Virus record (IMG/VR): IMGVR_UViG_3300022935_000005
Span: 124,001 to 188,000 of that record
Direction: 5' to 3' (one strand)
Length of the DNA stretch: 64,000 nucleotides
The number at the start of each line of letters is the position of its first letter. Position 1 is the first letter of the stretch. Below are positions 25,141 through 47,620 of this stretch, piece after piece. Below the pieces are notes generated by a model. That model did not search any database and had not been told where the DNA came from. It saw nothing but the letters and a program-made list of their open reading frames with translations. Both the position numbers and the translations under genes were made by a program.

Positions 25141-25578
25141 ATGGAGAATTTAGAACTTATAGCTACTCATATGTGCAAAGAATCTTGTGTCGGATATCAT
25201 GGTAACCTATTTGGTGGAACCATGCTGGCATGGTTGGATGAAGCCGGTGTCGCCTTCGCTTCACAAGTCTGCGGTTCGCCAAGAATGGTGACAAAGTCAA
25301 TATCAGAAGTCATCTTCGTGCGGCCTGTTCGTCCTGGGCAAATCATAAAGATATACGGTGATGTCGTGAATATTGGCAACACGTCTATTAAGATTAGATT
25401 GTTTGCAAGGCGACACAGCGTAGTGAACGGCTCACAAAAGCCTGTCTGCGATGTTGAGATGACGTTTGTCAGAATTGATGGCGACGGTGAGCCTGTACCA
25501 ATCTTGAATATAAAAGAAAAGTACGCTGATAAAAAGCAGAAGATAGAATCTGAAGTAAGAAAAGATATGGAGTATTGA
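25141..25578 (+). CDS. Hotdog-fold acyl-CoA thioesterase (YciA-like)
   Basis: HGNLFGGTMLAWLDEAG, FVRPV, GNTSI, MTFVRIDGDGEP. Confidence 0.85.
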   Translation: MENLELIATHMCKESCVGYHGNLFGGTMLAWLDEAGVAFASQVCGSPRMVTKSISEVIFVRPVRPGQIIKIYGDVVNIGNTSIKIRLFARRHSVVNGSQKPVCDVEMTFVRIDGDGEPVPILNIKEKYADKKQKIESEVRKDMEY

Positions 25579-26327
25579 TGTTAGATAGAGTTGAATTGTA
25601 TGGCGATGGTATTGGAACAGTAGAGTACGTCGAGCACATGGGCAATGATTTGACAATCGTCAATAGCGCCAGAGTTTCATTTGGAAAGCACAAGGAAGAG
25701 TTAGATGAGAAAGACGAGAAGCTTATTAAGTACCTTGTTAACCACGGCCACACGAGTACGTTCGAGCATAATGTTGTCACTTTTCGCTTTGTGGTTCCTC
25801 TCTTTATTAGGAGCCAGCATCACCGTCATAGGACTTGGAGTTATAACGAGATTAGCAGACGGTATACTGACGTTGATCTAAGGTTTTATGAACCGGATAG
25901 TTTTAGGACCCAGCACAAGAGTAATAGACAGGCAAGCAACGTCCAAGAAGAGGTGGATCCTGTAATAATACCTGACTTAAGTGACGCTGGCTATGGGACG
26001 AGAGCATCACAAGTAGTGAGAGAGCACCATGTCCAGAGCTTGAACCTTTATAACAGTTTACTGTCAGCGGGAGTTTGTAGAGAGCAGGCACGAGGGGTGC
26101 TTCCTCAAAACCTCTACACAGAGTATTACGGGACATGTTCATTACATAACGCTCTTCATTTTTGTCGTCTCCGATTGCACGAGGGCGCCCAGTGGGAAAT
26201 TCAAAGAGTGGCTGAGGCCATGGTACAAATAATGTCGACATTGTATCCTGTCGCTGTGTCTGCGTGGATTGACAACTTGGATGATAAAGACCTCCGAAAA
26301 AAAATGAAAAAAAATATTAGCCTGTAA
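25578..26327 (+). CDS. thyX: FAD-dependent thymidylate synthase
   Basis: HTSTFEH; RHRTWSYNEISRRY (RHR-X7-SxR); EQARGVLP; AQWEI. Confidence 0.95.
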   Translation: MLDRVELYGDGIGTVEYVEHMGNDLTIVNSARVSFGKHKEELDEKDEKLIKYLVNHGHTSTFEHNVVTFRFVVPLFIRSQHHRHRTWSYNEISRRYTDVDLRFYEPDSFRTQHKSNRQASNVQEEVDPVIIPDLSDAGYGTRASQVVREHHVQSLNLYNSLLSAGVCREQARGVLPQNLYTEYYGTCSLHNALHFCRLRLHEGAQWEIQRVAEAMVQIMSTLYPVAVSAWIDNLDDKDLRKKMKKNISL

Positions 26328-28917: not shown

Positions 28918-28926
28918 GGAGGAATT

Positions 28927-29667: not shown

Positions 29668-29675
29668 GGGGAAAC

Positions 29676-31660: not shown

Positions 31661-32465
31661 AGGTCCTGAGGTAAAGAAGACCACAGACGGATTGAGAGAG
31701 TTCTTCTTAAATGAGGAGATAACTGCTCTAGATTTCGGATCTGGAAGGTACGCCAAGAAAGAACCCATCGGCTACTCATCTTTTTGCGAAGAACTTCCAA
31801 AGCTGGTGACAGCAGTTGGATGCAAGGGAAAGTTCATCTATTTTGTGTTTGCAGACGGCAGCAGCATGTGGAACACTTTAGGCATGACAGGATGGTGGTC
31901 AGAGACAGCAGGCTATCATCCTCGCGCTGCGTTGTATGTCAATGATGATAAACATATGGTGTATAACGATATGAGGAATTTTGGGACCTTCAAGTTTGTC
32001 AGCACATACGATGAGCTAAAGAAGAAACTTAACTCCTTAGGCCCAGACTTGCTCTCTGAAGATGTTTCGTTAGATGTATTTAAGAAAAGCCTTACGAAAG
32101 GAAAGAGGGCTGAGAAACCCATCTCGCAACTCTTGATGGATCAATCTGTCGTGTCAGGAATTGGAAACTACCTCAAGGCAGAGATCTTGTACAGCTGCAA
32201 GATGTCTCCTCATCGGCTGTGTCAAGATATCTCTGATGGCGAGTTCGAGTCGCTGCTTTACGCTTCAAGAAGTATTATGAAGTTATCGTATAGCACTGGT
32301 GGTGCGACCATCCGAAATTATAAAAGCACGACTGGTAAAAATGGCATGTACACTAGAAGGTTCGCTGTCTATAATCAAAAGAGTGATCCTCTTGGAAACG
32401 CTGTAGTCAGAGAAACGACGGCTGATAAAAGGACCACACACTGGGTTCCAAGTATTCAGAAATAA
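31653..32465 (+). CDS. Fpg/Nei-family DNA glycosylase/AP lyase with zincless finger; CTG start
   Basis: CTG-CCT-GAA-GGT-CCT-GAG-GTA = (M)PEGPEV with SD GGAGGT 5 nt upstream; KGKF, GMTG, DMRNFG, H2TH LMDQSVVSGIGNYL, RTTHWVPSIQ. Confidence 0.9.
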   Translation: MPEGPEVKKTTDGLREFFLNEEITALDFGSGRYAKKEPIGYSSFCEELPKLVTAVGCKGKFIYFVFADGSSMWNTLGMTGWWSETAGYHPRAALYVNDDKHMVYNDMRNFGTFKFVSTYDELKKKLNSLGPDLLSEDVSLDVFKKSLTKGKRAEKPISQLLMDQSVVSGIGNYLKAEILYSCKMSPHRLCQDISDGEFESLLYASRSIMKLSYSTGGATIRNYKSTTGKNGMYTRRFAVYNQKSDPLGNAVVRETTADKRTTHWVPSIQK

Positions 32466-34321: not shown

Positions 34322-37300
34322 ATGCGTCGTTCATCTCTTCTTGTGCCTGACAGGTTCATCTCTCTTCATTCCCATGATGGGTTTAGTACCTTCGATGGCT
34401 TAGGCTATCCTCAAGAGCACATCGATTTTGTGATTGAGAATGGGATGGACGGGTGGTGTCTTACCAACCATGGTCACATGAATTCTTTCGGTCACGCTTT
34501 TTTGCACGCTGAAAAGATTGCGAAGCGTGGCGGAAACTTTAAGTTTGTACCAGGGTGCGAGATGTATGTCCATCCTGATCTAGATGCGTGGCGCCTTGAC
34601 ATGCAGATCCGAGAAGCTGCTAAGAAGGGTGATAAGGCCGCGCTCATGACTCTTCGTTCTCAGCGAGAAGCTATTGCTACACCACTGACTGCAATTGTTG
34701 ATGGTGATGACGAAATTGTAGATGTTGGCACCGAAGATGCTGGTCTCACTGTTGAGAATGAAGAAGAAACCAAGTCTGCAAAGTTCTATGATCCAATCAA
34801 ACGCCGCCATCATTTGGTAGTCCTTCCCAAGACGAGCGAAGGTCTCCAGCGTCTTTTTCACCTCGTCAGTAAGGGGTATCAGGAGGGCTTCTATCGCTTC
34901 CCACGTATCGACTATAAGATGCTAAAGGAAGCGGCCGCTGGTGGTCATCTGATGGTTTCTACAGCTTGTATCGGCGGTCCAATCGCTTACGAGGTTTTCC
35001 GTCATGCTCAGCAAGTTGAGTTTGATGATCTTTCGTATAAGTTGATGGATGACCCGACTTTCCGAAACAACGTCTTGACTGGCGTTGGAAATGCGTACCA
35101 GGGTCTTGTAGACGCTGTTGGTATCGATGATGTTAATCTCGAACTTCAATTTAATAAGCTTCCTGCGCAGCATCTGGTCAACCGCGCGATTATTGAGTTT
35201 GCTAACAAGAACGGGCTACAAGATAAGCTGGTAGTCACAACCGATTCTCACTACGCACGTCCAGAACACTGGCGAGAGCGTGAGCTCTATAAGAAGCTTG
35301 GGTGGCTTAACTATCGAGAGTTTGATCCCTCCAAGTTGCCGCAAGGTATTGAAGACTTGAAGTGTGAACTATATCCTAAGAACAACGAACAGGTTTGGGA
35401 TACGTACCTTAAGACAACTGACGGTATGGATTTTTATGATGATGAGGTAGTGCACAACGCCATCACTCGCCCGTATGATCTTGTCCACAACGAAATCCAA
35501 CAGATTACCCCTGATCGTTCGATGAAGCTGCCCTCTTACGTCGTTCCTGAAGGTACTACTGACGATAAGGCTCTACTTGAAGCCTGTAAGAAGGGTTTGG
35601 TCGAGCGTGGTCTTGCGCACGATGAAAAGTACATCAAGCGTCTCAAGTATGAGCTAAAGATCATCAAGGAAAAGAATTTTTCTCGATATTTCTTGACCAT
35701 GGGCGCCATCATCGATATCGCTAAGAAGGCGATGCTGGTCGGTCCAGGCCGCGGTTCTGCTGCCGGAAGTCTCGTGGCGTATGTTCTCCGTCTTACCGAC
35801 GTTGATCCATTTGAGTATGATCTCATGTTTGAGAGGTTCCTCAACCCAAGCCGTGAAGGTGCACCAGATATTGATACTGATGTAGGTGACCGTGATCTTC
35901 TTATCAACATGATGAAAGAGGAGTGGGGCGACGAAAACATCGTTCCAATCTCTAACTACAACACTTTTAAGCTTAAGTCTCTGGTCAAGGACATCTCTCG
36001 CTTTTACGGGATCCCGTTCGATGAAGTCAACAAGGCTTTGGCTCCTGTAGAGGATGACGTGAAGCGTGCCGTGTTCAAGCCCGGCACTGATAAAAACTTG
36101 TTTGTCTTGCTTTATGAAGATGCGATTGCTCACTCGAAGACATTTCGCGACTTTATTGAGAAGTACCCTGAGGTTGCCGAGCCGATTCAGGTACTCTTTA
36201 AGCAGAACAAGGCACTTGGCCGCCACGCCGGTGGATGTATTGTTTCGGAAAACATCGCTGAGCGTATGCCTCTGATTAAAGCCCGCGGCGAACTACAAAC
36301 TCCGTGGGTTGAAGGTATGAACTACAAGCATCTTGAAACCTTCGGCTGGATTAAGTTTGACCTTCTCGGTCTTGAAACACTACGTATTGTTCAGCGTACT
36401 ATCGAGCTGATTCTTCAGCGCCGGGAGGGTATCGAGGATCCGACATTCTCGCAAGTCTATGAGTGGTTCAACAATAACATGGACCCCAAGGTTCTCGATA
36501 TGGACGACCAGCATGTTTATAAGCATGTCTACGAAGAAGGTCGCTTCCCAGGAGTCTTCCAGCTGGCTGGTCGAGGTGCTAGAAACCTCTTTATGAAAGC
36601 AAAGCCCAAGAGCATCATCGACATTGCTACTCTGACATCGATTTATCGCCCGGGCCCTCTCACTGCGAAAGTAGACAAACTGTATATCCAGGCAAAGAAC
36701 AACCCTGATGATATTGACTACGGCCATCCTCTTATCAAGGAAGTTCTTGAAGAGACATACGGTATGATTGTCTTCCAAGAGCAGATCATGAAGTTGTGTT
36801 CCGTGGTGGCTGGCTTCCCGGAGGAGGAAACGGACACAGTCCGCCGGAGCATTATGAAGCGTAAAGCTTCTGAAGCCGCTGAGTCCCTTGCTAAGGCTCG
36901 AGCGATTAAGGAACAGTTTGTTGCTGGTGCCGTCAAGAATGGTGTCGACGCACAGCTTGCCGATGATCTGTACGAAAAGATTCTCTACTTCTCAGGCTAC
37001 GGTTTCAATAAGGCGCACGCTGTTTCGTACGCTATTGACTCGTACTACTGCGCTTGGCTTCTAACATACTTTGAGGAAGAGTGGCTTTGCGCTTATCTCG
37101 AGGCGATGTCTGGTAATGACAAGAAGCGTAGTAAGGCCTTTGGTGAGGTTAAGGCTCTCGGCTATCGAGTCGTTCCGCTTGATATCAATTATGCAACCAA
37201 GAAGTGGACTATCCTCGACGGTAAGAAGTTCATGCCTTCTTTCCTTTCTTGTAAGGGCGTCGGAGAATCTGCGATCGATGAGATTGTCGCTAATCGGCCG

Positions 37301-37936
37301 TACCAGAATATCGACGATCTGTTATGGGACGAGGATGGTAAGTGGCGCCACTCTAAGTTCAACAAGCGGGCAATGGAAGCGTTAATTAATATTCGCGCAT
37401 TCGAATCCATGGATCTTGTAGGCGACGGTAAGACATTCGAGAGCTATAAGCACATGCATGAAGTCATTATAAACCGGAACACCGATATCAAGAAATGGAC
37501 TAAGCGTGATCCAGAGCGAGGAAAGAGTAATTTCAAAGAGGCGCTATTGGATACTGAGGGAATCGGTAATTGGACCCGTCGTGAGATGGTCGAAAATAGC
37601 ATGAAGCATTTCGGTTCATTTAACGCCTCCACACTCGTTAATGAGGAAATTCAGGCTCGGCTCTCTAAGAAGAATGTACGTTGTATCGATGACATCGACG
37701 AGCATGATGTATATTGGTTCTTGGTGACAGACGCTAAGCCGAAGCTTACTAAAAACAAGAAGCCATATCTTTTGGTGACGGCCACAGGACTAGACGGCAA
37801 AAATATCAGGATATTCTGCTGGGGCTGGGATGGTCAGACAGAGTTGCCCCTCTACAGCCTTTGTGTTGCAGAAGTTAAGAAAAATGATTTCGGATATCAA
37901 ACTTCTATGAGTAAAGTCAAGCTTCTTCGTATATGA
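34322..37936 (+). CDS. dnaE: DNA polymerase III alpha subunit (family C)
   Basis: PHP domain (SLHSH, TNHG, DSHY), GPGRGSAAGSLVAY, PDIDTD, KFDLLGL, YGFNKAHA. Confidence 0.95.
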   Translation: MRRSSLLVPDRFISLHSHDGFSTFDGLGYPQEHIDFVIENGMDGWCLTNHGHMNSFGHAFLHAEKIAKRGGNFKFVPGCEMYVHPDLDAWRLDMQIREAAKKGDKAALMTLRSQREAIATPLTAIVDGDDEIVDVGTEDAGLTVENEEETKSAKFYDPIKRRHHLVVLPKTSEGLQRLFHLVSKGYQEGFYRFPRIDYKMLKEAAAGGHLMVSTACIGGPIAYEVFRHAQQVEFDDLSYKLMDDPTFRNNVLTGVGNAYQGLVDAVGIDDVNLELQFNKLPAQHLVNRAIIEFANKNGLQDKLVVTTDSHYARPEHWRERELYKKLGWLNYREFDPSKLPQGIEDLKCELYPKNNEQVWDTYLKTTDGMDFYDDEVVHNAITRPYDLVHNEIQQITPDRSMKLPSYVVPEGTTDDKALLEACKKGLVERGLAHDEKYIKRLKYELKIIKEKNFSRYFLTMGAIIDIAKKAMLVGPGRGSAAGSLVAYVLRLTDVDPFEYDLMFERFLNPSREGAPDIDTDVGDRDLLINMMKEEWGDENIVPISNYNTFKLKSLVKDISRFYGIPFDEVNKALAPVEDDVKRAVFKPGTDKNLFVLLYEDAIAHSKTFRDFIEKYPEVAEPIQVLFKQNKALGRHAGGCIVSENIAERMPLIKARGELQTPWVEGMNYKHLETFGWIKFDLLGLETLRIVQRTIELILQRREGIEDPTFSQVYEWFNNNMDPKVLDMDDQHVYKHVYEEGRFPGVFQLAGRGARNLFMKAKPKSIIDIATLTSIYRPGPLTAKVDKLYIQAKNNPDDIDYGHPLIKEVLEETYGMIVFQEQIMKLCSVVAGFPEEETDTVRRSIMKRKASEAAESLAKARAIKEQFVAGAVKNGVDAQLADDLYEKILYFSGYGFNKAHAVSYAIDSYYCAWLLTYFEEEWLCAYLEAMSGNDKKRSKAFGEVKALGYRVVPLDINYATKKWTILDGKKFMPSFLSCKGVGESAIDEIVANRPYQNIDDLLWDEDGKWRHSKFNKRAMEALINIRAFESMDLVGDGKTFESYKHMHEVIINRNTDIKKWTKRDPERGKSNFKEALLDTEGIGNWTRREMVENSMKHFGSFNASTLVNEEIQARLSKKNVRCIDDIDEHDVYWFLVTDAKPKLTKNKKPYLLVTATGLDGKNIRIFCWGWDGQTELPLYSLCVAEVKKNDFGYQTSMSKVKLLRI

Positions 37937-37990: not shown

Positions 37991-39013
37991 ATGCACTTAG
38001 GCACTTATGAAGGTTTCACTGACTGTTATGTTGATATGATTTCAAAGGTCATGCGTGAACCGCAATACGAATCTGCACCTCGCGGCCAGAATATCAAAGA
38101 GATCCTCGGGGCTTCATTTACAATCAAGAACCCTCGTGACAGAATTCCTTACGTCGTAGGTCGTAAGTTTAGCATGAGTTACATGGTCGCTGAGCTGATA
38201 TGGTATCTTGCGGGTGATAATAGTACTGAGTGGATATCGAAGTATTCATCCTTCTGGAAAGATATTAGTGACGACGGTGTGACTGCAAATTCAGCGTATG
38301 GTGCCCGTCTCTTTAAGCCGCATGACAAGATTGCGCAGGGCAGATATACTCAGCTCGATTACGTGATTGAAGAGCTTAAACGAGATCCTGATTCTCGGCG
38401 AGCTGTCATGCATCTAAGAGTTCCAGATGACTCTATTGATGCGAAGCTTGATGTACCTTGTACACTAGCTCTACAGTTTTTTATTAGAAACGGTGCTCTA
38501 CACCAAGTTGCTAACATGAGAAGCTCGGACTTGATTTTTGGGATTGCTTACGATATTCCCGCATTCACAATGTTTCAAGAACTGATTGCAAATGAGCTTG
38601 GCGTTGATGTGGGTACGTACACTCACACAAGCAACTCACTCCATATCTACGAACGTCATTTTGATATGGCTGAAGAGATTACTAGAACGGGCCTCGTTGA
38701 TGAATCGCTGAATCTACAACAGGCAAATGGTCCTATGCCACCGCTGGTAGGTGATATCAAAGAAGTCCAAGAGAAGGTGGCTGAAGTCTACGAGTATGAA
38801 TCCCAACTACAGCGTTGCGAGAATTTACAGGATGTAATAAACCTACATGATTTAAGCCAGTCTTTCTCTGATTCTATGTTCCGTGATTTTGCAACTATTC
38901 TTACGTCATCTCGTCTAAGAAAACTTGGTCATAAAGCGGATGCGCGAGCAATGTCCGCGCAGACGTCCTTTAGCGGATATTCTTTTAATGTCAGGAGTAA
39001 CTCTAATGCATAA
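37991..39013 (+). CDS. dCMP hydroxymethylase-like thymidylate synthase homologue (T4 gp42-like)
   Basis: ELIWY, NSAYG, DSRRAV, PCT (Cys157), MRSSDLIFGIAYD with Asp188 at the ThyA Asn177 position, SLHIYERHF. Confidence 0.85.
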   Translation: MHLGTYEGFTDCYVDMISKVMREPQYESAPRGQNIKEILGASFTIKNPRDRIPYVVGRKFSMSYMVAELIWYLAGDNSTEWISKYSSFWKDISDDGVTANSAYGARLFKPHDKIAQGRYTQLDYVIEELKRDPDSRRAVMHLRVPDDSIDAKLDVPCTLALQFFIRNGALHQVANMRSSDLIFGIAYDIPAFTMFQELIANELGVDVGTYTHTSNSLHIYERHFDMAEEITRTGLVDESLNLQQANGPMPPLVGDIKEVQEKVAEVYEYESQLQRCENLQDVINLHDLSQSFSDSMFRDFATILTSSRLRKLGHKADARAMSAQTSFSGYSFNVRSNSNA

Positions 39014-40151
39014 GAAATACGACTACCTTATCGTAGGTGCTGGCCTTTTCGGTGCCACTTTCGCTCGGCAGCTGACTGATGCGGGATACACATGTCTAGT
39101 TGTTGATAGACGGAGCCACATCGGCGGGAATGTATACAGCGAAAAGAGAAACGGCATCGATGTTCACGTCTACGGTGCTCACATTTTCCACACTAATGAT
39201 GACCGTATTTGGGACTATGTAAATCGATTTACAGAGTTTAACAATTACATTAACAAGCCTAAGGTTCGGTACGGTAACAACATCTATTCTTTCCCGATCA
39301 ATTTGATGACTCTTCACCAGCTCTGGGGTGTTACGTCACCAGCAGAAGCAGAAGCAAAGCTAAAAGAGGTCAGGATTCCTTGTGAGAATCCCGACAATCT
39401 AGAAGATTGGATTCTATCACAGGTAGGCCCGGAGATCTATCAGACGTTCATTAGGGGGTACACGATGAAGCAGTGGCAGCGTGACCCAAGAGAGCTACCA
39501 GCCTCTATTATCAAGCGGCTACCGATTCGAATGATTTTCGAAGAGAATTACTTTTTTGACAAGTACCAAGGTATTCCAGTAGGCGGGTATACGCAAATGG
39601 TCGCGAATATGTTAGAGGGTATTGAGGTCAGGACAGGGGTCGAGTATTTTACCGACCGGTCAGAGCTTGAGTCCTTGGCACACAACGTAGTATTTACCGG
39701 TAAGGTCGATGAATATTTCGATTACTGTGAGGGTGAGCTAGAGTATCGAACCCTACGGTTCGAACATGAAGAGCTTGAGGGCGATTTTCAAGGTAACGCG
39801 GTTGTGAATTATACACATCCAGAAGTGCCCTTCACACGTATTCTAGAGCATAAGCATTTTCAGCCCCAGACGGCTTCGAAGATTGAGAACACAATCGTCA
39901 CTCGAGAGTATTCTGCAGAGTATAAGCGAGGAAAGACACCGTACTATCCGATCAACGATGCGCGAAATACTGCTCTATACCAAAAGTATGCTGCCATGAA
40001 AGCTGCGACTCCTAACGTCATTTTTGGCGGGAGGTTATCTGAATACAAGTACTATGATATGCATCAGGTGATCGGTTCTGCTCTTGTTAAGGCAAGAAAA
40101 GAAATTGAAAAACGTAAGAGCAACGACTACAATATAACAGTTGAATCATAA
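39006..40151 (+). CDS. glf: UDP-galactopyranose mutase
   Basis: VGAGLFG FAD motif, HIGGN, YGAHIFHT, YFFDKYQGIP, LEYRTL, TRILEHKHF, PYYP, GRLSEYKYYDMHQ. Confidence 0.95.
   Translation: MHKKYDYLIVGAGLFGATFARQLTDAGYTCLVVDRRSHIGGNVYSEKRNGIDVHVYGAHIFHTNDDRIWDYVNRFTEFNNYINKPKVRYGNNIYSFPINLMTLHQLWGVTSPAEAEAKLKEVRIPCENPDNLEDWILSQVGPEIYQTFIRGYTMKQWQRDPRELPASIIKRLPIRMIFEENYFFDKYQGIPVGGYTQMVANMLEGIEVRTGVEYFTDRSELESLAHNVVFTGKVDEYFDYCEGELEYRTLRFEHEELEGDFQGNAVVNYTHPEVPFTRILEHKHFQPQTASKIENTIVTREYSAEYKRGKTPYYPINDARNTALYQKYAAMKAATPNVIFGGRLSEYKYYDMHQVIGSALVKARKEIEKRKSNDYNITVES
40106..40133 (+). promoter_or_regulatory. Sigma70-like promoter TGAAAA-N16-TACAAT inside the 3' end of glf
   Basis: Recurring motif upstream of the glycosyltransferase. 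Confidence 0.55.
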
Positions 40152-40162
40152 GGAGATTTGTA

Positions 40163-41218
40163 ATGAGAGTACTTTATAGCTTTTGGGGCTTTATCACCCC
40201 GCTCGAAAAGAACACAGTTGTCAACACACCAGACGGTGAGCGAGGTAACAGGGTTGATTTTGTCAATGAACTAATGTCTCGAGGGCATACTCCAGTTCAG
40301 CTGCAGAAGATGCGCGATGAAGAGCAGTACCCAGGCGTTGAGTATGATGCAACTGGCTTCCCAGATGGTGACATTCTGTACGTTGAGTGGAGGTGGCCAA
40401 CTTGGAAGAACAGCGGAGAAAACCCAGCTGAATCTGATTACAATCGACAATGCGAGGTTCTTGATTACTATCACGCTCAGGGTGTTCCGATTATTATTCA
40501 CGACGGTGATTTGAAGATGACTCCTGAGGAAGAACTCCGATGGCCAAACGCTATTCTAGCAGATGCCTGTGTGTCACCGCAGCACCAGACCCGTAATCGT
40601 ATCACAATTCCGTGGTGCAATTACCTTAAGCGGTATTTCGAGCCAGTTGAGTATTCGTACAACTACACATACGTTGGAAACAACTACGAGCGAGAGGATC
40701 CATTTGAGAAGTATTATGTACAGCCCTCTCAGCGGCTTCGCATGGCCGGCCTACAGACATCCATCTACGGTAACTGGCTTCAAAAGTCTCCAGAGCGAAT
40801 TGATCCAGCTCTTTTGCTAGCCAAGACGCCAAGCGTTGCTTTTGGGCCACGTCTTTCCTACAAGGATATTTTCGCAGTCTTAAACGAGTCGATTACTGTG
40901 ACTCACATTACCAAGCCTGCTTACACTCCTTATGGGAACATCACAGGTCGATTCTTCGAGGCAATCAAGAGTAACGTTCCAGCCTTGGTGCCGATTGAGT
41001 TTCAGCATGCTGTTCCAGTGGGCCTTAAGGATGAGTCCCTACTCGTAAGAAGCGCTGACGATGTTGTTGAGAAAGTAAAGTGGCTTTCTACATTAAATGC
41101 TTCCGAGAGAAAAGCTCTTGTTGACGCTCAAGAAGAAGCATTACGAACCGTGATAAACCCTCATCCCGGATACCGAGTTGACCTTCTTGAAAGTGTTGCA
41201 GGAGATTTTATCCGATGA
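40163..41218 (+). CDS. DNA glycosyltransferase, T4 beta-glucosyltransferase-like (GT-B fold)
   Basis: 351 aa; HDGDLK, YVGNNYERE, YGNW, NITGRFFEAIKSNVPALVPIEF, VRSADDVVEKV, RKALVDAQEEAL match recalled T4 BGT segments in order. Confidence 0.7.
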   Translation: MRVLYSFWGFITPLEKNTVVNTPDGERGNRVDFVNELMSRGHTPVQLQKMRDEEQYPGVEYDATGFPDGDILYVEWRWPTWKNSGENPAESDYNRQCEVLDYYHAQGVPIIIHDGDLKMTPEEELRWPNAILADACVSPQHQTRNRITIPWCNYLKRYFEPVEYSYNYTYVGNNYEREDPFEKYYVQPSQRLRMAGLQTSIYGNWLQKSPERIDPALLLAKTPSVAFGPRLSYKDIFAVLNESITVTHITKPAYTPYGNITGRFFEAIKSNVPALVPIEFQHAVPVGLKDESLLVRSADDVVEKVKWLSTLNASERKALVDAQEEALRTVINPHPGYRVDLLESVAGDFIR

Positions 41219-41733
41219 AAGTAGCTTTTATTGGTCCTGACATGACTGGCAAGTCGAATATTGCTGAAGCGTTATCAGAGAGGTTGTCGATTCCAGTATT
41301 CAAGAACTCTGGAGAGTGGAAGACACAGCTGGATAGCCCAAATTACTTCCTGAACTTGCTTCGTTACGGCGGTCCGTTTTTAATGGATTTTATGAAGCAG
41401 ACCAACGTAAGCGTTATTCTGGACAGGTTCTACCCTTGTGAGCTAGTATACTCTCAAGCGTTCGATAGAGACACTGATCATCAAGCCATCGCGTGGATGG
41501 ATGAGCAGTTTTCGAATGAAGGAGGAGTCTTTATTCTTTGCCTGAGAAAAGATTATTCTGGACTAGTCGATGATGTATTCCCAGAAGACCTCCCTGGGGA
41601 GAAACTAGAAGAGATTGGCTCTCTTTATAAGGATTTTGCGAAGTGGTCCCAATGTGAAGTGATGACTCTATACACTGATGATTGGGATATCAATAGACAG
41701 ATTAAAGACATAACTGATTTTTTGGGAGTTTGA
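41215..41733 (+). CDS. dNMP kinase (thymidylate kinase-like)
   Basis: P-loop GPDMTGKS; ILDRFYPCELVY. Confidence 0.8.
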   Translation: MKVAFIGPDMTGKSNIAEALSERLSIPVFKNSGEWKTQLDSPNYFLNLLRYGGPFLMDFMKQTNVSVILDRFYPCELVYSQAFDRDTDHQAIAWMDEQFSNEGGVFILCLRKDYSGLVDDVFPEDLPGEKLEEIGSLYKDFAKWSQCEVMTLYTDDWDINRQIKDITDFLGV

Positions 41734-41734
41734 C

Positions 41735-42727
41735 ATGAGTTTGCGTAAAGCGTTAGTTACAGGGTGTTGTGGTTTTATTGGATCTCATCTTACTAGGATG
41801 TTAGTAGGACAAGGTTGGTACGTAGAGGGTGTTGATGATTTGTCGAACGGCGATCTTACATCTATCGATGACCTAAAATTCAGAGCAGTACATGATTCTT
41901 TGTTACCGTTCTATAATGCTGAACCCTCGGCTGGTAGTCTTCTTGTGATGACGTGCGATTTCGCTTCGCCAGCTGTCTTAGAGAGGGTTACAACTGGAAG
42001 TTATGATGTTATTTTCCATCTTGCTGCAAACCCCCGTGTTGAGTTCTCCGTACAAAATCCAGCTTTGACAACTAATGATAACGTTCAAAAGACTGTAGAG
42101 CTGATGTCAGCCGCAAGAAATAATATCGATCGTTTTGTCTTCGCTGCTTCTTCTGCCGCATATGGAAACGGTGTAGAGTTGCCTACTACAGAACAAGAGC
42201 AGTGTAATCCCACTTCACCATATGGTCTACAGAAGCTTGTTGTAGAGCAATTCGGTAAGCTGTATAGTGAGTTATACGGCATGGATTTTGCCGCCTTGAG
42301 GTTCTTCAATGTGTACGGTCCAGGTCAGGACGGGACTAGCCCTTACTCAACAGCAATATCTGCTTGGTGCACACGCCTAAAGAAAGGTGAGCCTCTACGA
42401 AGTGATGGTGACGGCCAGCAGTCAAGAGATCTAGTCTATGTCGAAGATGTAGCTAGCGCTCTAACGCAGGTAGCGAATCATCCAGAGAGACTTGGGTTTG
42501 AGGTCTTTAATGTTGGGACCGGTATTGCCTTGACGAACAAAGAAGTTCTAGATCATCTGACAAAGCTGTTTCCTGATGCTGAAGTAAATCATGCTCCTGA
42601 AAGACCTGGCGACGTTAAGCACACTCTAGCTGCCGCTGATCACATCAAGGAGAAAATTGGGTGGGAACCTAAGGTTGAATTTTGGGATGGTCTGACAGCC
42701 ACACTAGAGTGGTGGAAGCTAGCATGA
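41735..42727 (+). CDS. NAD-dependent NDP-sugar epimerase/dehydratase (extended SDR, GalE/WbpP-like)
   Basis: TGCCGFIGSH, FHLAA, ASSAAYG, YGLQK, LRFFNVYG, GDGQQSRD. Confidence 0.9.
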   Translation: MSLRKALVTGCCGFIGSHLTRMLVGQGWYVEGVDDLSNGDLTSIDDLKFRAVHDSLLPFYNAEPSAGSLLVMTCDFASPAVLERVTTGSYDVIFHLAANPRVEFSVQNPALTTNDNVQKTVELMSAARNNIDRFVFAASSAAYGNGVELPTTEQEQCNPTSPYGLQKLVVEQFGKLYSELYGMDFAALRFFNVYGPGQDGTSPYSTAISAWCTRLKKGEPLRSDGDGQQSRDLVYVEDVASALTQVANHPERLGFEVFNVGTGIALTNKEVLDHLTKLFPDAEVNHAPERPGDVKHTLAAADHIKEKIGWEPKVEFWDGLTATLEWWKLA

Positions 42728-43155
42728 ATCGCTCTGCCTGGCGTGGCAAGTCCTCGAAAATAAAGAAGCCATGGGGCTTCGAAATAAAGTGGACCGGCCT
42801 TTTTAATGGAAAAGAGATTCATATCTCTGATGGGAAAAGAACGAGTCTGAAGTTTAACTCTCACAAAAGCGAGATTCTTTACGTGTCAGTAGGAAGAGTT
42901 AGTATTGAATGTGCAGATGAGAATCACTTTTTAGATCCCGTAGGATCCCCGTCAAGGCTCGTTGAATTAAAGGCTGGTGAATTCATTAATGTCCAAGCAG
43001 GCTGTCCTTATAGGGTGACAGCATTAATGAATAGCATAGTGTTTGAAATATCTGATAATACTTCAGATGTTGGAAGGATTATTCTAGAAGATGATTATGG
43101 GAGAGAAGTGGATCAAACTGGCATGTGGATATTTAATCCTCCAAAGTCAGAGTAA
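42724..43155 (+). CDS. Cupin-fold protein (sugar isomerase-like), metal histidines apparently absent
   Basis: KPWG...SLKFNSHKSE...GCPYRV...FEIS...LEDDYGR. Confidence 0.65.
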   Translation: MNRSAWRGKSSKIKKPWGFEIKWTGLFNGKEIHISDGKRTSLKFNSHKSEILYVSVGRVSIECADENHFLDPVGSPSRLVELKAGEFINVQAGCPYRVTALMNSIVFEISDNTSDVGRIILEDDYGREVDQTGMWIFNPPKSE

Positions 43156-43187: not shown

Positions 43188-44066
43188 ATGAGCACACTAG
43201 ATCCTAATTCAGTAAACGTAGTAATCTATCACGCCGATTGTACCGATGGATTCGGCGCCGCCTACTCTGCATGGAAGTGCTTGGGCAATAGAGCAGAATA
43301 CTACCCATGCAAGCACGGGACAGAGCCACCCAACGTGAAAGGAAAGAATGTTGTCATTCTTGACTTTTCATTTAACAATGAAACGACAAAGAAGATGATC
43401 GAAGAGTCTGCCGCACTCTTGATTATCGACCACCACAAGTCTGCGATGGTTGAGCTTCATGACATTCCTAACACGCATTTCGATATGACAAAGTCAGGTG
43501 CGATGCTTTCATGGGAATTCTTTCACCCTGGGAAAGAGCCACCGAAGTTTATCAAATACATCATGGATAGAGACTTGTGGACCTGGGAACTTGACTACTC
43601 AAAAGAGTTCTCTGCCGCGTTCGATATGGTTCCTTTTGAGTTCGAAGAATTTGAAAAGTTTGAAGATGATTCCGTCTTTGACGATGCAGTGAAGAGAGGC
43701 TCATACATTCTTGCTTATAGTAAGACTGTTATAAAGAAAGTCTGCGAAAAAGCACAACAAAGAAAACTGGATGACAAAGATGTCTTAGTTGTCAATGCAT
43801 CTCACTGGATGTCAGAGATTGGTGCTCGTCTAGCTCCTGATTGCGATTTTGCTTTAATCTGGTACTGGGATCACGAGGAGGGCCACACAAAGGTTAGTCT
43901 CCGTTCATTCCATGATACTGTTGATGTAGCTGAGGTCGCAAAAAGGTTTGGCGGCGGCGGCCATAGAAAGGCTTCCGGGTTCCAGCTCCCAAAGGGATCC
44001 CACATAGAGGATATATTTGATAAACCAAAAAAGACCTTGAGGTCCAGAAAGAAGCAGGAAGAGTAA
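43188..44066 (+). CDS. DHH/DHHA1 phosphoesterase
   Basis: YHADCTDG, ILDFS, IDHH, VSLRS, GGGGHRKASG. Confidence 0.9.
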   Translation: MSTLDPNSVNVVIYHADCTDGFGAAYSAWKCLGNRAEYYPCKHGTEPPNVKGKNVVILDFSFNNETTKKMIEESAALLIIDHHKSAMVELHDIPNTHFDMTKSGAMLSWEFFHPGKEPPKFIKYIMDRDLWTWELDYSKEFSAAFDMVPFEFEEFEKFEDDSVFDDAVKRGSYILAYSKTVIKKVCEKAQQRKLDDKDVLVVNASHWMSEIGARLAPDCDFALIWYWDHEEGHTKVSLRSFHDTVDVAEVAKRFGGGGHRKASGFQLPKGSHIEDIFDKPKKTLRSRKKQEE

Positions 44067-44069
44067 TTG

Positions 44070-44624
44070 ATGAGTAAGGTTTATTCTACGATCTTAGCCG
44101 ATCCACCCTGGATGCAACGTGGAGGTGGTAAATCAAAACGAGGTGCTGACAGGCACTACCCTTTGATGAAAGAGGCAGATATCAAGAAAGTCATGTCTGA
44201 CATGCTGGATGGCAAAGTGGCCGACAATGCTCACATGTATATGTGGGTCGCCAATAACCACCTTCCTGAAGCGCTGAGAATAATAGAGCATCTGGGTTTC
44301 AAATATATCACCAATCTTGTATGGGCTAAGACTCATTTCGGTTTAGGAAGGTACTTCCGCGGCCAGCATGAGCTGTGCATATTCGCTACTAAGGGCCGCG
44401 GCTTTTCTGCTAGGACACAAGCTAATAACGTTCCCTCCCTTATTGGGGGTAAACTAGTTTCTCCTACCCGCCACAGTGCGAAGCCCGCCGAGATGTACGA
44501 ATTGATAGAAGGTAGAAGTGAGGGCCCCTTTCTGGAGCTGTTTGCGAGGACGAGACGCCCCGGCTGGGATGCGTTGGGTAATGAAGTACCTGAGGAAAAA
44601 GATGCAAAGACCGAACTGGGATGA
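44070..44624 (+). CDS. MT-A70 family N6-adenine (or N4-cytosine) methyltransferase
   Basis: ILADPPW, HYPLM, GLGRYFRGQHE, HSAKP, LELFAR, WDALGNE. Confidence 0.9.
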   Translation: MSKVYSTILADPPWMQRGGGKSKRGADRHYPLMKEADIKKVMSDMLDGKVADNAHMYMWVANNHLPEALRIIEHLGFKYITNLVWAKTHFGLGRYFRGQHELCIFATKGRGFSARTQANNVPSLIGGKLVSPTRHSAKPAEMYELIEGRSEGPFLELFARTRRPGWDALGNEVPEEKDAKTELG

Positions 44625-45021
44625 CATATGGATGAAGTTTGCCTATTTGATTGCTGACCGGTCATATGACCCGCGTCACAAGGTGGGTTCTGTAGTTGTT
44701 ACTGACTCAAACACACAAGTGCTAGCAATAGGCTACAATGGAAATTATTCAGGCGGTCCAAATGAAGTCGAGTCAAACACACCTGGCGAGTCTGGCATGA
44801 TCCACGCGGAGATCAATGCAATGATAAAGCTAGACTTCAATAATCCGAATAGAAAGATAATGTATTTGACGCTAAGTCCTTGTCGAGCCTGCGCGAAAGC
44901 TATTGTCAATGGTGGCATTTCTGAGGTGGTGTACAGCGAAGAATATCGCGATACTTCTGGCTTAGAACTACTAAGTCACGCAGGAGTCAAAGTCAGAAGG
45001 CACGATATTAAGCAACTCTAG
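44602..45021 (+). CDS. dCMP deaminase
   Basis: RPNWD, GYNG, HAEINA, PCRAC. Confidence 0.9.
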   Translation: MQRPNWDDIWMKFAYLIADRSYDPRHKVGSVVVTDSNTQVLAIGYNGNYSGGPNEVESNTPGESGMIHAEINAMIKLDFNNPNRKIMYLTLSPCRACAKAIVNGGISEVVYSEEYRDTSGLELLSHAGVKVRRHDIKQL

Positions 45022-46906: not shown

Positions 46907-47620
46907 ATGCCAGCAATTACAGACAAAGAGATTTTGCAAGTTATTCAAGAGACGTTAGGAAAACCCAAGGTCTCGAAAAAAATTCTTAATGAAGCCTATG
47001 TGCTACAACCCAAGAAGTACGACATTCAAACTGACGTTTTGAGTGAAAAATCTATTGCTGCCAATATCCAAGATTTCGAAGATACAGTAAAGATCGTGAA
47101 CGAAGTGTCTGCAAAGCTTGATACTGTAGACAGAACAGACTTGAACGCCAAAGACAGCGGCTTTCGAGAACTAAAGGTCGCAGAAGCCTATAACTTAAAT
47201 AACGCGTTTTTGACCTCATTACACTTTGATAACATAGCTGATCCAACCTCTAAAGTCTCTATGGATTCTTTGGCGTACATAAGACTCTCACGTGATTTTG
47301 GCAGTTTTGAAGACTGGCAAAAGGATTTCATAGCATGCGCGTTATCTGCTAGGGATGGGTATGTTGTAACAGTGTATAATGGTTCTTTAAACAGATACAT
47401 GAACATTATGATTGATGATTGTCAGGTTGGGATGATGGCAAACTGCTTTCCCGTGATCTGCCTGTCTGTTAGAGAAAGAAACTACTTTAGGGATTATCTA
47501 AATGATCGCCGTTCTTACGTCTTTGCTATGATGAAAGAACTTCGATGGTCATTGATCGAGAAAAGAATTAAAAGAGCCGACAAAGTGGCAAAACTTTTGT
47601 CAACACCATTAGGGGACTAG
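46907..47620 (+). CDS. Fe/Mn superoxide dismutase-fold protein lacking metal ligands
   Basis: RDFGSFEDWQKDF and PVICLSVRERNYFRDY (canonical PxxxxDVWEHAYYxDY). Confidence 0.7.
   Translation: MPAITDKEILQVIQETLGKPKVSKKILNEAYVLQPKKYDIQTDVLSEKSIAANIQDFEDTVKIVNEVSAKLDTVDRTDLNAKDSGFRELKVAEAYNLNNAFLTSLHFDNIADPTSKVSMDSLAYIRLSRDFGSFEDWQKDFIACALSARDGYVVTVYNGSLNRYMNIMIDDCQVGMMANCFPVICLSVRERNYFRDYLNDRRSYVFAMMKELRWSLIEKRIKRADKVAKLLSTPLGD

What the first reader, a model, noticed from the sequence alone, without database searches (positions are those of the whole stretch)
37991..42727. Candidate new DNA hypermodification system: furanose-glycosylated (galactofuranosyl) 5-hydroxymethylcytosine
Seen: five tightly coupled genes right after dnaE encode a dCMP-type thymidylate synthase homologue, UDP-galactopyranose mutase (Glf), a T4 BGT-like glycosyltransferase, a dNMP kinase and an NDP-sugar epimerase. 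Established: T4 makes hm-dCMP (gp42), phosphorylates it (gp1), incorporates it and glucosylates it on DNA with BGT. GalE-type epimerase plus Glf makes UDP-galactofuranose, normally a cell-wall/LPS donor. Inference: the phage makes its own UDP-Galf and transfers the furanose to hmC in DNA, giving beta-galactofuranosyl-hmC (BGT inverts). I know glucosyl, gentiobiosyl and arabinosyl cytosine modifications in phages, but no Glf-dependent galactofuranosylation. Such a base would be expected to evade restriction enzymes, CRISPR nucleases and possibly glucosyl-hmC-specific type IV enzymes.
Basis: partly seen in the sequence, partly recalled or inferred. Interest (0 to 1): 0.95.

Follow-up and report, generated by a model that had tools for sequence, protein, structure and literature searches.

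The report
Phage hmC-DNA glycosylation operon with Glf
An uncultured salt-marsh phage carries a tight operon that most likely makes hydroxymethylcytosine DNA and decorates it with a phage-tailored sugar, probably galactofuranose; this would be a new variant of the T4-type and RL38J1-type DNA sugar modifications, and its chemistry is still untested.

Summary
The five genes are real, co-directional and almost without gaps directly after dnaE. The Glf start moves to 39006. The operon continues into a cupin, a DHH phosphoesterase, an MT-A70 methylase and a dCMP deaminase.

- **Base.** The ThyA homologue has the T4 gp42/MilA active-site signature (L143D, C146, D169, N177D), not the D169N signature of 5-hydroxy-dCMP synthases. 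A separate ThyX is present. 5-hydroxymethyl-dCMP is therefore well supported.
- **Glf.** It is a confident UDP-galactopyranose mutase.
- **Epimerase.** The SDR is a 4-epimerase type of unresolved substrate.
- **Kinase.** It is YorR/TMPK-like, not gp1-like. It is the same "nucleotide kinase" found beside the first transferase in RB69, DLP3 and RL38J1.
- **Transferase.** It is a GT-B enzyme only distantly BGT-like.
- **Family survey.** In about 50 related metagenomic loci the core is kinase–GT–ThyA homologue–epimerase. Glf is an accessory gene, fixed in the window's clade and recruited independently in two other lineages.

This supports a phage-made UDP-Galf donor but does not prove that the furanose goes onto hmC. 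The idea is no longer unprecedented. A 2026 paper proposes phage-made UDP-Galf for galactosyl-5-hydroxycytosine in RL38J1, and epimerase-dependent 5hmC glycosylation is already known.

Verdict: a new variant of a known kind, with moderate-to-high interest.

The parts
34322..37936 (+). DnaE-type DNA polymerase III alpha (1204 aa). It is the replicative polymerase that would incorporate the modified dCTP, and it is the conserved upstream neighbour of the cassette.
   Evidence: Pfam PHP, DNA_pol3_alpha, finger and HHH_6 domains. It is the conserved neighbour in nearly all related loci.
37991..39013 (+). ThyA-family dCMP 5-hydroxymethylase (predicted 5hm-dCMP synthase), 340 aa, with a C-terminal extension of about 100 aa.
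   Evidence: Pfam Thymidylat_synt 1e-36. The best PDB match is MilA CMP hydroxymethylase, 2e-40. The signature L143D/C146/D169/N177D is identical to T4 gp42 and differs from the 5hoC synthases (E-C-N-D) and from true ThyA (L-C-D-N).
39006..40151 (+). UDP-galactopyranose mutase (Glf), 381 aa. It overlaps the upstream gene by 8 nt.
   Evidence: TIGR00031 365 bits against a cut-off of 304. 433 bits to E. coli UGM 1i8t and 408 bits to C. jejuni UNGM 4mo2; it has His/Lys like E. coli where UNGM has R59/R168.
40163..41218 (+). GT-B fold glycosyltransferase, 351 aa, predicted to be the DNA (hmC) glycosyltransferase.
   Evidence: AlphaFold model with pLDDT 92. Foldseek finds GT-B enzymes; T4 BGT has the highest TM among the listed hits (0.63). 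hhalign against a 7-member BGT alignment gives 94%, E 1e-7, over the C-terminal domain. The family has 470 clusters. Its context is always a DNA-modification cassette.
41215..41733 (+). YorR/thymidylate-kinase-like P-loop nucleotide kinase, 172 aa, predicted to be the hm-dCMP kinase.
   Evidence: The family profile hits SPbeta YorR (2axp) at 2e-15, then dNK and TMPK proteins. 7 of 15 members hit Pfam Thymidylate_kin. hhalign to RB69p045 gives 96%. There is no similarity to T4 gp1.
41735..42727 (+). SDR NDP-sugar 4-epimerase, 330 aa; substrate (UDP-Glc/Gal or UDP-GlcNAc/GalNAc) unresolved.
   Evidence: Pfam Epimerase 1e-52. The best PDB matches are UDP-GlcNAc and UDP-hexose 4-epimerases (6dnt, 4zrm, 6wjb, WbgU, WbpP). 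It has Ser...YxxxK and lacks the dehydratase Asp-Glu pair. It scores below the GalE equivalog cut-off (152 against 262).
42724..43155 (+). Small cupin protein (143 aa), translationally coupled to the epimerase. It may be a sugar isomerase; its role is unknown.
   Evidence: ATGA overlap. PHROG 7851 at 1.5e-9. Atlas look-alikes are cupins of the mannose-6-P isomerase / lyxose isomerase type. It is present in part of the family only.
43188..44066 (+). DHH/DHHA1 phosphoesterase (292 aa), a conserved downstream neighbour of unknown role.
   Evidence: Pfam DHH and DHHA1; PHROG 4771 at 4e-77; conserved in most related loci.
44070..44624 (+). MT-A70 family DNA (adenine) methyltransferase.
   Evidence: Pfam MT-A70 2e-16; PHROG 359 at 1e-46; called as a 184-aa gene in the close relative L002.
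44602..45021 (+). dCMP deaminase (139 aa), which would feed dUMP to ThyX.
   Evidence: Pfam dCMP_cyt_deam_1 1e-19; conserved in the family.
25575..26327 (+). ThyX, the flavin-dependent thymidylate synthase. It is the phage's own dTMP synthase, so the ThyA homologue is free for another reaction.
   Evidence: Pfam Thy1 1.5e-49.

Best explanation
This is a pre- plus post-replicative cytosine hypermodification operon of a large uncultured estuarine/salt-marsh phage.

Proposed steps:
1. The ThyA homologue converts dCMP to 5-hydroxymethyl-dCMP. This is inferred from the active-site signature.
2. The YorR-like kinase phosphorylates it, host NDP kinase finishes hm-dCTP, and the phage DnaE polymerase incorporates it. 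All of this is inferred.
3. dCMP deaminase and ThyX supply dTMP separately.
4. The phage 4-epimerase turns UDP-glucose into UDP-galactopyranose, and Glf contracts the ring to UDP-galactofuranose. The Glf identity is shown by sequence; the epimerase substrate is inferred.
5. The GT-B transferase puts that sugar on the 5-CH2OH of hmC in DNA, giving galactofuranosyl-hmC. This is inferred; the anomeric configuration is unknown.

Across the phage family the kinase-GT-ThyA homologue-epimerase cassette is constant, while the sugar-tailoring genes are swapped. The family probably makes several different glycosyl-hmC bases, and the Glf form is one of them.

I put about 0.8 on 'glycosylated hmC DNA' and about 0.5 on 'the sugar on hmC is galactofuranose'.
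For: - **Base type.** The D-C-D-D signature is shared with T4 gp42 in all 55 family members. The proven 5hoC synthases RB69 gp48 and RL38J1 gp216 are E-C-N-D, and true ThyA is L-C-D-N (diagnostic residues from PMC13326640).
- **Separate dTMP route.** ThyX and dCMP deaminase are present.
- **Glf.** It scores above the equivalog cut-off and has UGM-type His/Lys.
- **Epimerase.** It has 4-epimerase motifs and its best matches are 4-epimerases.
- **Transferase.** GT-B fold, with T4 BGT the highest-TM hit among those listed, and the invariant R263/E266 aligned to BGT R269/E272.
- **Operon structure.** Genes overlap or are separated by 1-11 nt.
- **Conservation of Glf.** It is conserved in all 12 distinct members of the window's GT clade (support 100/98). 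In the most distant members it is better conserved than the ThyA homologue, kinase and epimerase (70-71% against 50-53%).
- **Independent recruitment.** Glf genes sit next to the same cassette in L057 (50% identity) and in L060/L062 (36% identity). The window's Glf is about 65% identical to Bacteroidota Glf.
- **A cultured parallel.** Lactobacillus phage ATCCB has a gp42-type ThyA homologue, a true BGT homologue and Glf in a row.
- **Literature precedents.** RL38J1 carries Glf with galactosyl-5hoC. GT activity on 5hmC that depends on a partner epimerase has been shown.
Against: - There are no chemical data on the DNA.
- The transferase's donor and acceptor are not shown.
- The sister clade and most of the family lack Glf but keep a 45-60% identical GT and the epimerase. 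The ancestral donor is therefore not a furanose, and only a few, mostly conservative residues distinguish the Glf+ GTs.
- The epimerase's nearest solved relatives act on UDP-GlcNAc.
- No dCTPase and no gp1-type kinase were found in the 64 kb, so full replacement of C is unproven.
- The role of the YorR-like kinase is unassigned even in RB69 and DLP3, which also encode a gp1-type kinase.
- From my own memory, not tested here: the characterised galactofuranosyltransferases are not BGT-like GT-B enzymes.
Confidence: 0.5

Rival explanations
1. hmC is glycosylated with a pyranose made by the epimerase alone (galactose, GalNAc or a uronic acid), as presumably happens in the Glf-less relatives. Glf then supplies UDP-Galf for something else: a second sugar added by a transferase encoded elsewhere in the 180-280 kb genome, or a non-DNA target.
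For: Most of the family has the same GT family and epimerase without Glf. Few residues distinguish the Glf+ GTs. In RL38J1 several GTs act in series. Duerkop et al. 2016 suggested a WbbI-like Galf transferase as a second DNA sugar writer in Enterococcus phages.
Against: Glf is inserted exactly between the ThyA homologue and the GT, with an 8-nt overlap and an 11-nt gap. No second GT was found among the window ORFs scanned. There are three independent Glf insertions directly beside the kinase-GT pair.
Confidence: 0.22
2. The pair makes a different furanose donor: UDP-GalfNAc from UDP-GlcNAc (as with C. jejuni UNGM) or UDP-arabinofuranose. The base would then be N-acetylgalactofuranosaminyl-hmC or arabinofuranosyl-hmC.
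For: The epimerase's best solved relatives are UDP-GlcNAc/GalNAc 4-epimerases (6dnt, 6wjb, WbgU, WbpP). The Glf scores 408 bits to UNGM 4mo2. HexNAc-5hmC and arabinofuranosyl-5hoC exist in phages.
Against: The Glf has His and Lys, as in E. coli UGM, at the two positions where UNGM has R59 and R168. That these residues set specificity is recalled from Poulin et al. 2010, not tested here. No UDP-xylose or UDP-arabinose genes are in the cluster.
Confidence: 0.12
3. The base is not hmC. Either the ThyA homologue is a 5-hydroxy-dCMP synthase as in RB69, DLP3 and RL38J1, or the cluster does not modify DNA at all (a MilA-like nucleoside pathway, or cell-surface glycan modification).
For: The module order ThyA homologue - GT - YorR-like kinase is the same as in the 5hoC phages. 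MilA, an antibiotic-pathway CMP hydroxymethylase, is the best PDB hit.
Against: D169 is retained in all 55 family members, whereas every tested 5hoC synthase has Asn there. The operon sits between dnaE and dCMP deaminase inside a replication module containing gp32-like, RecA, DnaB and ThyX genes. Distant members of the GT family sit beside other DNA-hypermodification genes such as aGPT-Pplase3.
Confidence: 0.05

Closest known systems
T4 glucosyl-hmC pathway (gp42 dCMP hydroxymethylase, gp1 dNMP kinase, gp56 dCTPase, alpha- and beta-glucosyltransferases)
   Same: A ThyA-family enzyme with the same L143D/D169/N177D signature sits beside a GT-B transferase, as gene 42 and b-gt do in T4. The logic is the same: a pre-replicative base, then post-replicative sugar transfer from a UDP-sugar. 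A dCMP deaminase is present.
   Different: The kinase is YorR/TMPK-like, not gp1-like. No dCTPase was seen in the window. The GT is only distantly related to BGT. The phage encodes its own donor-tailoring enzymes, a 4-epimerase and Glf, instead of using host UDP-glucose. The polymerase is DnaE-type.
Rhizobium phage RL38J1 / Pootjesviridae galactosyl-(glucosyl)-5-hydroxycytosine (Lee et al., NAR 2026, PMC13326640)
   Same: A phage-encoded Glf (45% identical) with a proposed phage-made UDP-Galf. There is a ThyA homologue - GT - YorR-like nucleotide kinase module. Galactose is the base-proximal sugar.
   Different: The RL38J1 ThyA homologue is a flavin-dependent 5-hydroxy-dCMP synthase (D169N), so the sugar is ether-linked directly to C5. 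The window enzyme keeps D169. RL38J1's genes are scattered over about 75 kb, whereas here they form one operon. RL38J1's first GT shows no detectable similarity to the window GT. No epimerase is described in RL38J1.
RB69 / DLP3 arabinofuranosyl-5-hydroxycytosine clusters
   Same: A furanose sugar on a cytosine derivative. The phage makes its own NDP-sugar. A homologous YorR-like kinase lies next to the first GT and the ThyA homologue (hhalign 96% to RB69p045; Table 1).
   Different: The base is 5hoC rather than 5hmC. The sugar is a pentose made through the arabinose-5-P isomerase, kinase and uridylyltransferase route rather than through epimerase plus mutase.
Metavirome 5hmC glycosylation clusters, subclass II (GT + sugar epimerase) of Pyle et al. 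2023 (bioRxiv 10.1101/2023.12.21.572611)
   Same: A GT-B transferase is paired with an NDP-sugar epimerase, and GT activity on 5hmC depends on the partner epimerase. The products are Hex-, HexNAc- or HexA-5hmC.
   Different: There, 5hmC is made on DNA by a C5-methyltransferase plus a TET-like dioxygenase. Here it is made at the nucleotide level by a ThyA homologue. That paper's text mentions no mutase or furanose.
Lactobacillus phage ATCCB (MK504445) gene triad ATCCB_0045-0047
   Same: A gp42-type ThyA homologue (39% identical, D-C-D-D), a glycosyltransferase and Glf (46% identical) are adjacent. It is therefore a second, cultured candidate for Glf-linked hmC glycosylation.
   Different: Its GT is a true T4 BGT homologue (31% identity, 5e-49) and shows no similarity to the window GT. 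It has no epimerase and no YorR-like kinase in the triad. Its DNA chemistry has not been studied.

Membership tests
ThyA-family dCMP hydroxymethylase (T4 gp42 / MilA type) | Catalytic Cys146, plus Asp in place of Asn177 (cytosine specificity). | tested here: met
   The alignments show C in the VPC motif and D at the N177 position.
ThyA-family dCMP hydroxymethylase (T4 gp42 / MilA type) | An acidic residue at L143 (admits water) with Asp169 retained (folate type, not the 5-hydroxylase type). | tested here: met
   The signature is D-C-D-D in the window and in all 55 family members, identical to T4 gp42. The criteria come from PMC13326640.
ThyA-family dCMP hydroxymethylase (T4 gp42 / MilA type) | Formation of 5hm-dCMP from dCMP and methylene-tetrahydrofolate. 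| not testable with these tools
   Needs an enzyme assay or an in vivo LC-MS assay.
5-hydroxy-dCMP synthase (RB69 gp48 / DLP3 gp80 / RL38J1 gp216) | Asn at the position of E. coli ThyA Asp169 (D169N). | tested here: not met
   The window has ..MRSSD..; RB69 gp48 and RL38J1 gp216 have ..MRSQN...
UDP-galactopyranose mutase (Glf/UGM) | Full-length match above the curated equivalog cut-off, with the FAD-binding N-terminus and the GLF domain. | tested here: met
   TIGR00031 364.8 bits against a cut-off of 303.75; NAD_binding_8 plus GLF domains; 433 bits to 1i8t over residues 5-364.
UDP-glucose 4-epimerase GalE | Score above the GalE equivalog cut-off. | tested here: not met
   TIGR01179 152 bits against a cut-off of 262. 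It is an extended SDR with Ser/YxxxK and no dehydratase Asp-Glu pair. It is closest to UDP-GlcNAc and UDP-hexose 4-epimerases, so it is a 4-epimerase by type with its substrate unresolved.
T4 beta-glucosyltransferase family (Pfam T4-Gluco-transf / CAZy GT63) | Sequence membership: a Pfam or PDB sequence match to BGT. | tested here: not met
   There is no BGT Pfam hit at E<=0.01, no PDB sequence hit and no tblastn hit in 50,697 phage records.
T4 beta-glucosyltransferase family (Pfam T4-Gluco-transf / CAZy GT63) | GT-B fold with the BGT-like UDP-binding Arg/Glu motif and an N-domain catalytic Asp. | tested here: inconclusive
   Foldseek to 1qkj gives TM 0.63, but GT4 retaining enzymes score similar E-values. 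hhalign against 7 BGT homologues gives 94%, E 1e-7, over the C-terminal domain only; in the alignment the invariant R263/E266 align with BGT R269/E272. An invariant D114 follows a beta-strand as D100 does in BGT, but this was judged by eye only.
T4 gp1 deoxynucleoside monophosphate kinase | Homology to gp1 (PDB 1dek/1del). | tested here: not met
   The profile search finds YorR (2axp, 2e-15), then dNK and TMPK proteins, and no gp1. tblastn of T4 gp1 against the window finds nothing better than E=2.8.
YorR-like 'nucleotide kinase' of phage cytosine-glycosylation clusters (DLP3 gp78, RB69 gp45, RL38J1 gp214) | Homology, and a position next to the first GT and the ThyA homologue. | tested here: met
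   hhalign gives 96% to RB69p045 and 85% to RL38J1 gp214. Adjacency holds in all loci.
T4-type complete C replacement | A dCTPase (gp56-like or MazG-like) that excludes dCTP. | tested here: inconclusive
   None was found among about 50 window ORFs scanned. However, the window is 64 kb of a 180-280 kb genome.

The most novel reading that the evidence does not exclude
The virion DNA carries 5-(D-galactofuranosyl-oxymethyl)cytosine. This would be the first hexofuranose on hmC and a DNA base not yet described. It would be written by a new family of DNA glycosyltransferases (about 470 sequence clusters). The cassette in estuarine, marine, freshwater and soil phages swaps sugar-tailoring genes (Glf, extra epimerases, FAD oxidoreductase + SDR, carbamoyl- and methyltransferases), which would produce a whole series of undescribed glycosyl-hmC bases.
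Probability: 0.45. Interest if true: 0.75.

Novelty: new variant of a known kind. Interest (0 to 1): 0.62.

Why it matters
If confirmed, this would add a new natural DNA base, a furanosyl hexose on hmC. It would also add a new, sequence-distinct family of DNA glycosyltransferases with a ready-made set of natural donor variants.

Such bases decide which restriction enzymes, type IV systems (GmrSD, McrBC) and CRISPR nucleases can cut phage DNA. The enzymes are also useful as tools for labelling 5hmC.

The family survey also gives a simple genomic rule: a D-C-D-D ThyA homologue, a YorR-like kinase, this GT and variable sugar genes, all next to dnaE. That rule can be used to find more such systems. 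The survey also points to a cultured phage, Lactobacillus phage ATCCB, in which the Glf-hmC link could be tested at once.

Tried and rejected
- Megablast of the cluster against GenBank phages found nothing. tblastn of the GT found nothing. The kinase gave only two marginal Pelagibacter-phage hits. DnaE has no relative above about 30% identity among cultured phages. There is therefore no cultured relative.
- BLASTP of the window GT against the ATCCB BGT homologue found no similarity.
- hhalign of the GT family against RL38J1 gp215 found nothing. hhalign of the BGT alignment against both proteins downstream of Glf in Aeromonas phage Aes012, and of the window GT family against the first of them, also found nothing.
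- The promoter and terminator scan of 33.8-47.8 kb was no better than shuffles, so operon boundaries rest on gene spacing only.
- Residues that discriminate Glf+ GTs from the Glf- sister clade number only 17 and are mostly conservative. F265 and K269 lie next to the R263/E266 motif, and F265 is shared with the independent Glf+ locus L057. This is too weak to call a donor switch.
- The metatranscriptome runs hold the cluster at low depth, with one contig spanning ThyA homologue, Glf and GT. DNA carry-over cannot be excluded, so transcription is not shown.
- Literature searches for galactofuranose with hmC or with phage DNA modification returned only PMC13326640 and PMC4999554 as relevant papers. 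No report of Galf-hmC was found in the library searched. The UNGM specificity paper could not be retrieved.
- The 4,6-dehydratase reading of the SDR was considered and rejected. The motif is SSAAYG, without the Asp-Glu pair, and the top hits are 4-epimerases.

Full report
**Observation.** The window is one long + strand gene array of a large phage. It encodes a T4-like baseplate protein, gp32-like protein, RecA, DnaB, a 5'-3' exonuclease, Clp protease, ThyX, a sigma factor and peptide deformylase.

- a ThyA homologue (37991-39013);
- Glf;
- a glycosyltransferase (40163-41218);
- a small P-loop kinase (41215-41733);
- an SDR epimerase (41735-42727).

The Glf start is best placed at the ATG at 39006, behind an AGGAG, which overlaps the ThyA homologue's stop by 8 nt. 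This agrees with the 381-aa gene called in close relatives. GT and kinase overlap by 4 nt, and kinase and epimerase are 1 nt apart.

A 143-aa cupin overlaps the epimerase stop (ATGA). It is followed by a DHH phosphoesterase, an MT-A70 methyltransferase and a dCMP deaminase.

**Which base.** The ThyA homologue's best solved relative is MilA, the CMP 5-hydroxymethylase (2e-40). I aligned it with T4 gp42, with RB69 gp48 and RL38J1 gp216 (both experimentally shown to make 5-hydroxy-dCMP) and with a bona fide phage ThyA.

The four diagnostic positions, in E. coli numbering L143, C146, D169 and N177, read as follows:
- D-C-D-D in the window, as in T4 gp42;
- E-C-N-D in the two 5-hydroxylases;
- L-C-D-N in true ThyA.

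The meaning of these residues is taken from Lee et al. 2026 (PMC13326640). All 55 homologues collected from related loci share D-C-D-D. The phage also has its own ThyX (25575-26327) and a dCMP deaminase. dTMP synthesis is therefore covered, and the ThyA homologue is free to make 5hm-dCMP.

**The sugar enzymes.** Glf passes NCBIfam's equivalog cut-off (365 against 304 bits). It scores 433 bits against E. coli UGM. At the two positions where the bifunctional C. jejuni UNGM has R59 and R168, it has His and Lys like E. coli UGM. That these residues govern GalNAc use is my recollection of Poulin et al. 2010 and was not verified here.

The SDR has the GxxGxxG, Ser and YxxxK motifs and lacks the dehydratase Asp-Glu pair. 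Its best solved relatives are UDP-GlcNAc and UDP-hexose 4-epimerases. It falls below the GalE equivalog cut-off. It is therefore a 4-epimerase by type with its substrate unresolved.

The cupin resembles mannose-6-phosphate isomerase or lyxose isomerase cupins. This is a lead only.

**The transferase.** There is no PDB sequence hit, no GenBank-phage hit, and only Pfam Glyco_trans_1_2 at 5e-6. An AlphaFold model built on 29 homologues is confident (pLDDT 92) and is a GT-B fold.

Foldseek places T4 BGT among the top hits, with the highest TM among those listed (0.63). Retaining GT4 enzymes have similar E-values. These include the two structures, 7fg9 and 7qsg, that Lee et al. report as best matches for RL38J1's second and third transferases.

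Profile-profile comparison with a 7-member BGT alignment gives 94% probability (E 1e-7), but only over the C-terminal nucleotide-binding domain. In the earlier 2-member comparison, the family's invariant R263/E266 align with BGT R269/E272.

'BGT-like' is therefore a distant resemblance, not membership. The stereochemistry of transfer cannot be deduced.

**The kinase.** The family profile hits SPbeta YorR (2e-15) and then deoxynucleoside and thymidylate kinases. Seven of 15 members hit Pfam Thymidylate_kin. It is homologous to RB69p045 (hhalign 96%) and, more weakly, to RL38J1 gp214.

These are the 'nucleotide kinases' that sit beside the first transferase and the ThyA homologue in RB69, DLP3 and RL38J1. 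It is not gp1-like. Its substrate is inferred to be the modified dCMP. Even in RB69 and DLP3 its role is unassigned.

**Family survey.** The GT has 187 close-to-moderate homologues in metagenomes and 470 clusters in an exhaustive profile search. I fetched 51 IMG/VR loci plus several assemblies and scored their neighbours.

The constant core is DnaE ... kinase - GT - ThyA homologue - epimerase ... DHH ... dCMP deaminase. Glf is not part of the core.

Glf is present in three places:
- in every one of the 12 distinct members of the window's GT clade (support 100/98), where it is always inserted between the ThyA homologue and the GT;
- in L057, independently (Glf 50% identical, GLF 226 bits, with a second epimerase);
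- in L060/L062, independently (Glf 36% identical, GLF 179 bits).

In the most distant members of the window's clade (L026, L027), Glf and the GT are 70-75% identical to the window's, while the ThyA homologue, kinase and epimerase are only 50-53%.

The window's Glf is about 65% identical to Bacteroidota Glf. That is closer than it is to the other two phage Glfs, so the three insertions look like separate captures.

The sister clade of 10 distinct GTs lacks Glf. Other branches carry extra SDR epimerases or dehydratases, or an FAD oxidoreductase plus a short-chain dehydrogenase. A distant member is a GT-methyltransferase fusion sitting beside a ThyA homologue, an epimerase, a carbamoyltransferase and an aGPT-Pplase3.

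I read this as one DNA-glycosylation cassette with interchangeable donor-tailoring genes. That pattern is the strongest argument that Glf feeds this transferase. It also shows that the ancestral donor was not a furanose. Only 17 mostly conservative residues separate the Glf+ GTs from their Glf- sisters.

**Cultured parallels.** Lactobacillus phage ATCCB has a D-C-D-D ThyA homologue (39% identical), a genuine BGT homologue (31% to T4 BGT, 5e-49) and Glf in a row. Its DNA has not been analysed.

Glf also occurs in Pootjesviridae, in T4-like Aeromonas, Stenotrophomonas and Erwinia phages, and in others.

**Literature.**
- Lee et al. 2026 show that RL38J1 DNA carries galactosyl-(glucosyl)-5-hydroxycytosine. 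They assign its Glf to UDP-Galf synthesis and define the D169N signature.
- Pyle et al. 2023 show GT activity on 5hmC that depends on a partner epimerase, giving Hex-, HexNAc- and HexA-5hmC.
- Duerkop et al. 2016 speculated that a Galf transferase acts on glucosyl-hmC in Enterococcus phages.
- I found no report of a Glf-dependent sugar on hmC.

**Origin and expression.** Identical copies of the GT and its flanking genes lie on four IMG/VR contigs of 83-281 kb. The cluster's DNA is in 13 salt-marsh metagenome runs and, in part, in estuary, freshwater and seawater runs.

Four salt-marsh metatranscriptome libraries also hold it at low depth. One contig spans ThyA homologue, Glf and GT, but DNA carry-over cannot be excluded.

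**Verdict.**
- Glycosylated hmC DNA is likely (about 0.8).
- Galactofuranose as the sugar on hmC is the best single reading (about 0.5).
- The main rival is a pyranose on hmC with Glf serving a second step.

The finding is a new variant of a known kind rather than a new category. It is still worth testing, because the base would be chemically new and the transferase family has not been characterised.

Noticed in passing
window 25575-26327: A ThyX (Thy1) flavin-dependent thymidylate synthase is encoded in the same genome as the ThyA-family hydroxymethylase. With the dCMP deaminase at 44602-45021, this gives a separate dTMP route.
   Followed up: partly
window 31238-31660 and 31692-32465: An HhH-GPD glycosylase-like protein and an Fpg/Nei-type DNA glycosylase lie about 2 kb upstream of dnaE and are conserved in close relatives (L002, L003). 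These are base-excision enzymes in a phage that probably has a modified base. Their target is unknown.
   Followed up: no
window 42724-43155: A 143-aa cupin is translationally coupled to the epimerase. It resembles mannose-6-P isomerase or lyxose isomerase cupins. It occurs in the window's clade and its sister clade but not in the whole family. It may belong to the sugar pathway.
   Followed up: partly
window 43188-44066: A DHH/DHHA1 phosphoesterase (NrnA/RecJ-like) is conserved immediately downstream of the cassette in most related loci. Whether it is a nuclease or a nucleotide phosphohydrolase (a possible stand-in for a dCTPase) is unknown.
   Followed up: no
window 44070-44624: An MT-A70 family DNA methyltransferase lies between the DHH gene and the dCMP deaminase. 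It would be a second, adenine-directed DNA modification. Only close relatives have a similar copy.
   Followed up: no
window 46907-47620: A 237-aa protein has only the C-terminal domain of Fe/Mn superoxide dismutase. It is conserved downstream of the cassette in nearly all related loci.
   Followed up: no
window 28132-30470: Three consecutive paralogous Laminin_G_3 (concanavalin-like lectin) genes, perhaps fibre or decoration proteins.
   Followed up: no
window 24122-25138, 52164-52553, 60883-61641, 62779-63444: Auxiliary genes: a glutamine-synthetase-like protein, a pterin-4a-carbinolamine dehydratase, a full sigma-70 factor and a peptide deformylase.
   Followed up: no
L006 1027-3291 and L042 5180-6463: In some relatives the DnaE gene is interrupted by inteins (Intein_splicing domains flanked by DNA_pol3_finger and HHH_6 pieces).
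   Followed up: no
L072 1-8387 (soil metagenome contig): A distant member of the GT family is fused to a methyltransferase. It sits with a ThyA homologue, an epimerase, an AAA_33 kinase, a carbamoyltransferase, an APH-like kinase and an aGPT-Pplase3. This is a candidate for a carbamoylated or methylated sugar on a DNA base.
   Followed up: no
L001 8337-11392 (Lactobacillus phage ATCCB, MK504445): A cultured phage with a gp42-type ThyA homologue, a true BGT homologue and Glf adjacent to one another. The papers describing it say nothing about its DNA modification.
   Followed up: partly
L063 7013-10287 (Aeromonas phage Aes012, Tulanevirus): This T4-like Aeromonas phage encodes Glf followed by two uncharacterised proteins of about 350 aa. 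Neither showed similarity to the BGT profile, and the first showed none to the window GT family.
   Followed up: partly
L007 4718-7463 and L039 4724-6474: In Glf-less relatives an FAD-dependent oxidoreductase (DAO/NAD_binding_8) and a short-chain dehydrogenase sit just upstream of the kinase-GT pair; L007 also has an extra SDR epimerase there. This suggests a different tailored sugar.
   Followed up: no
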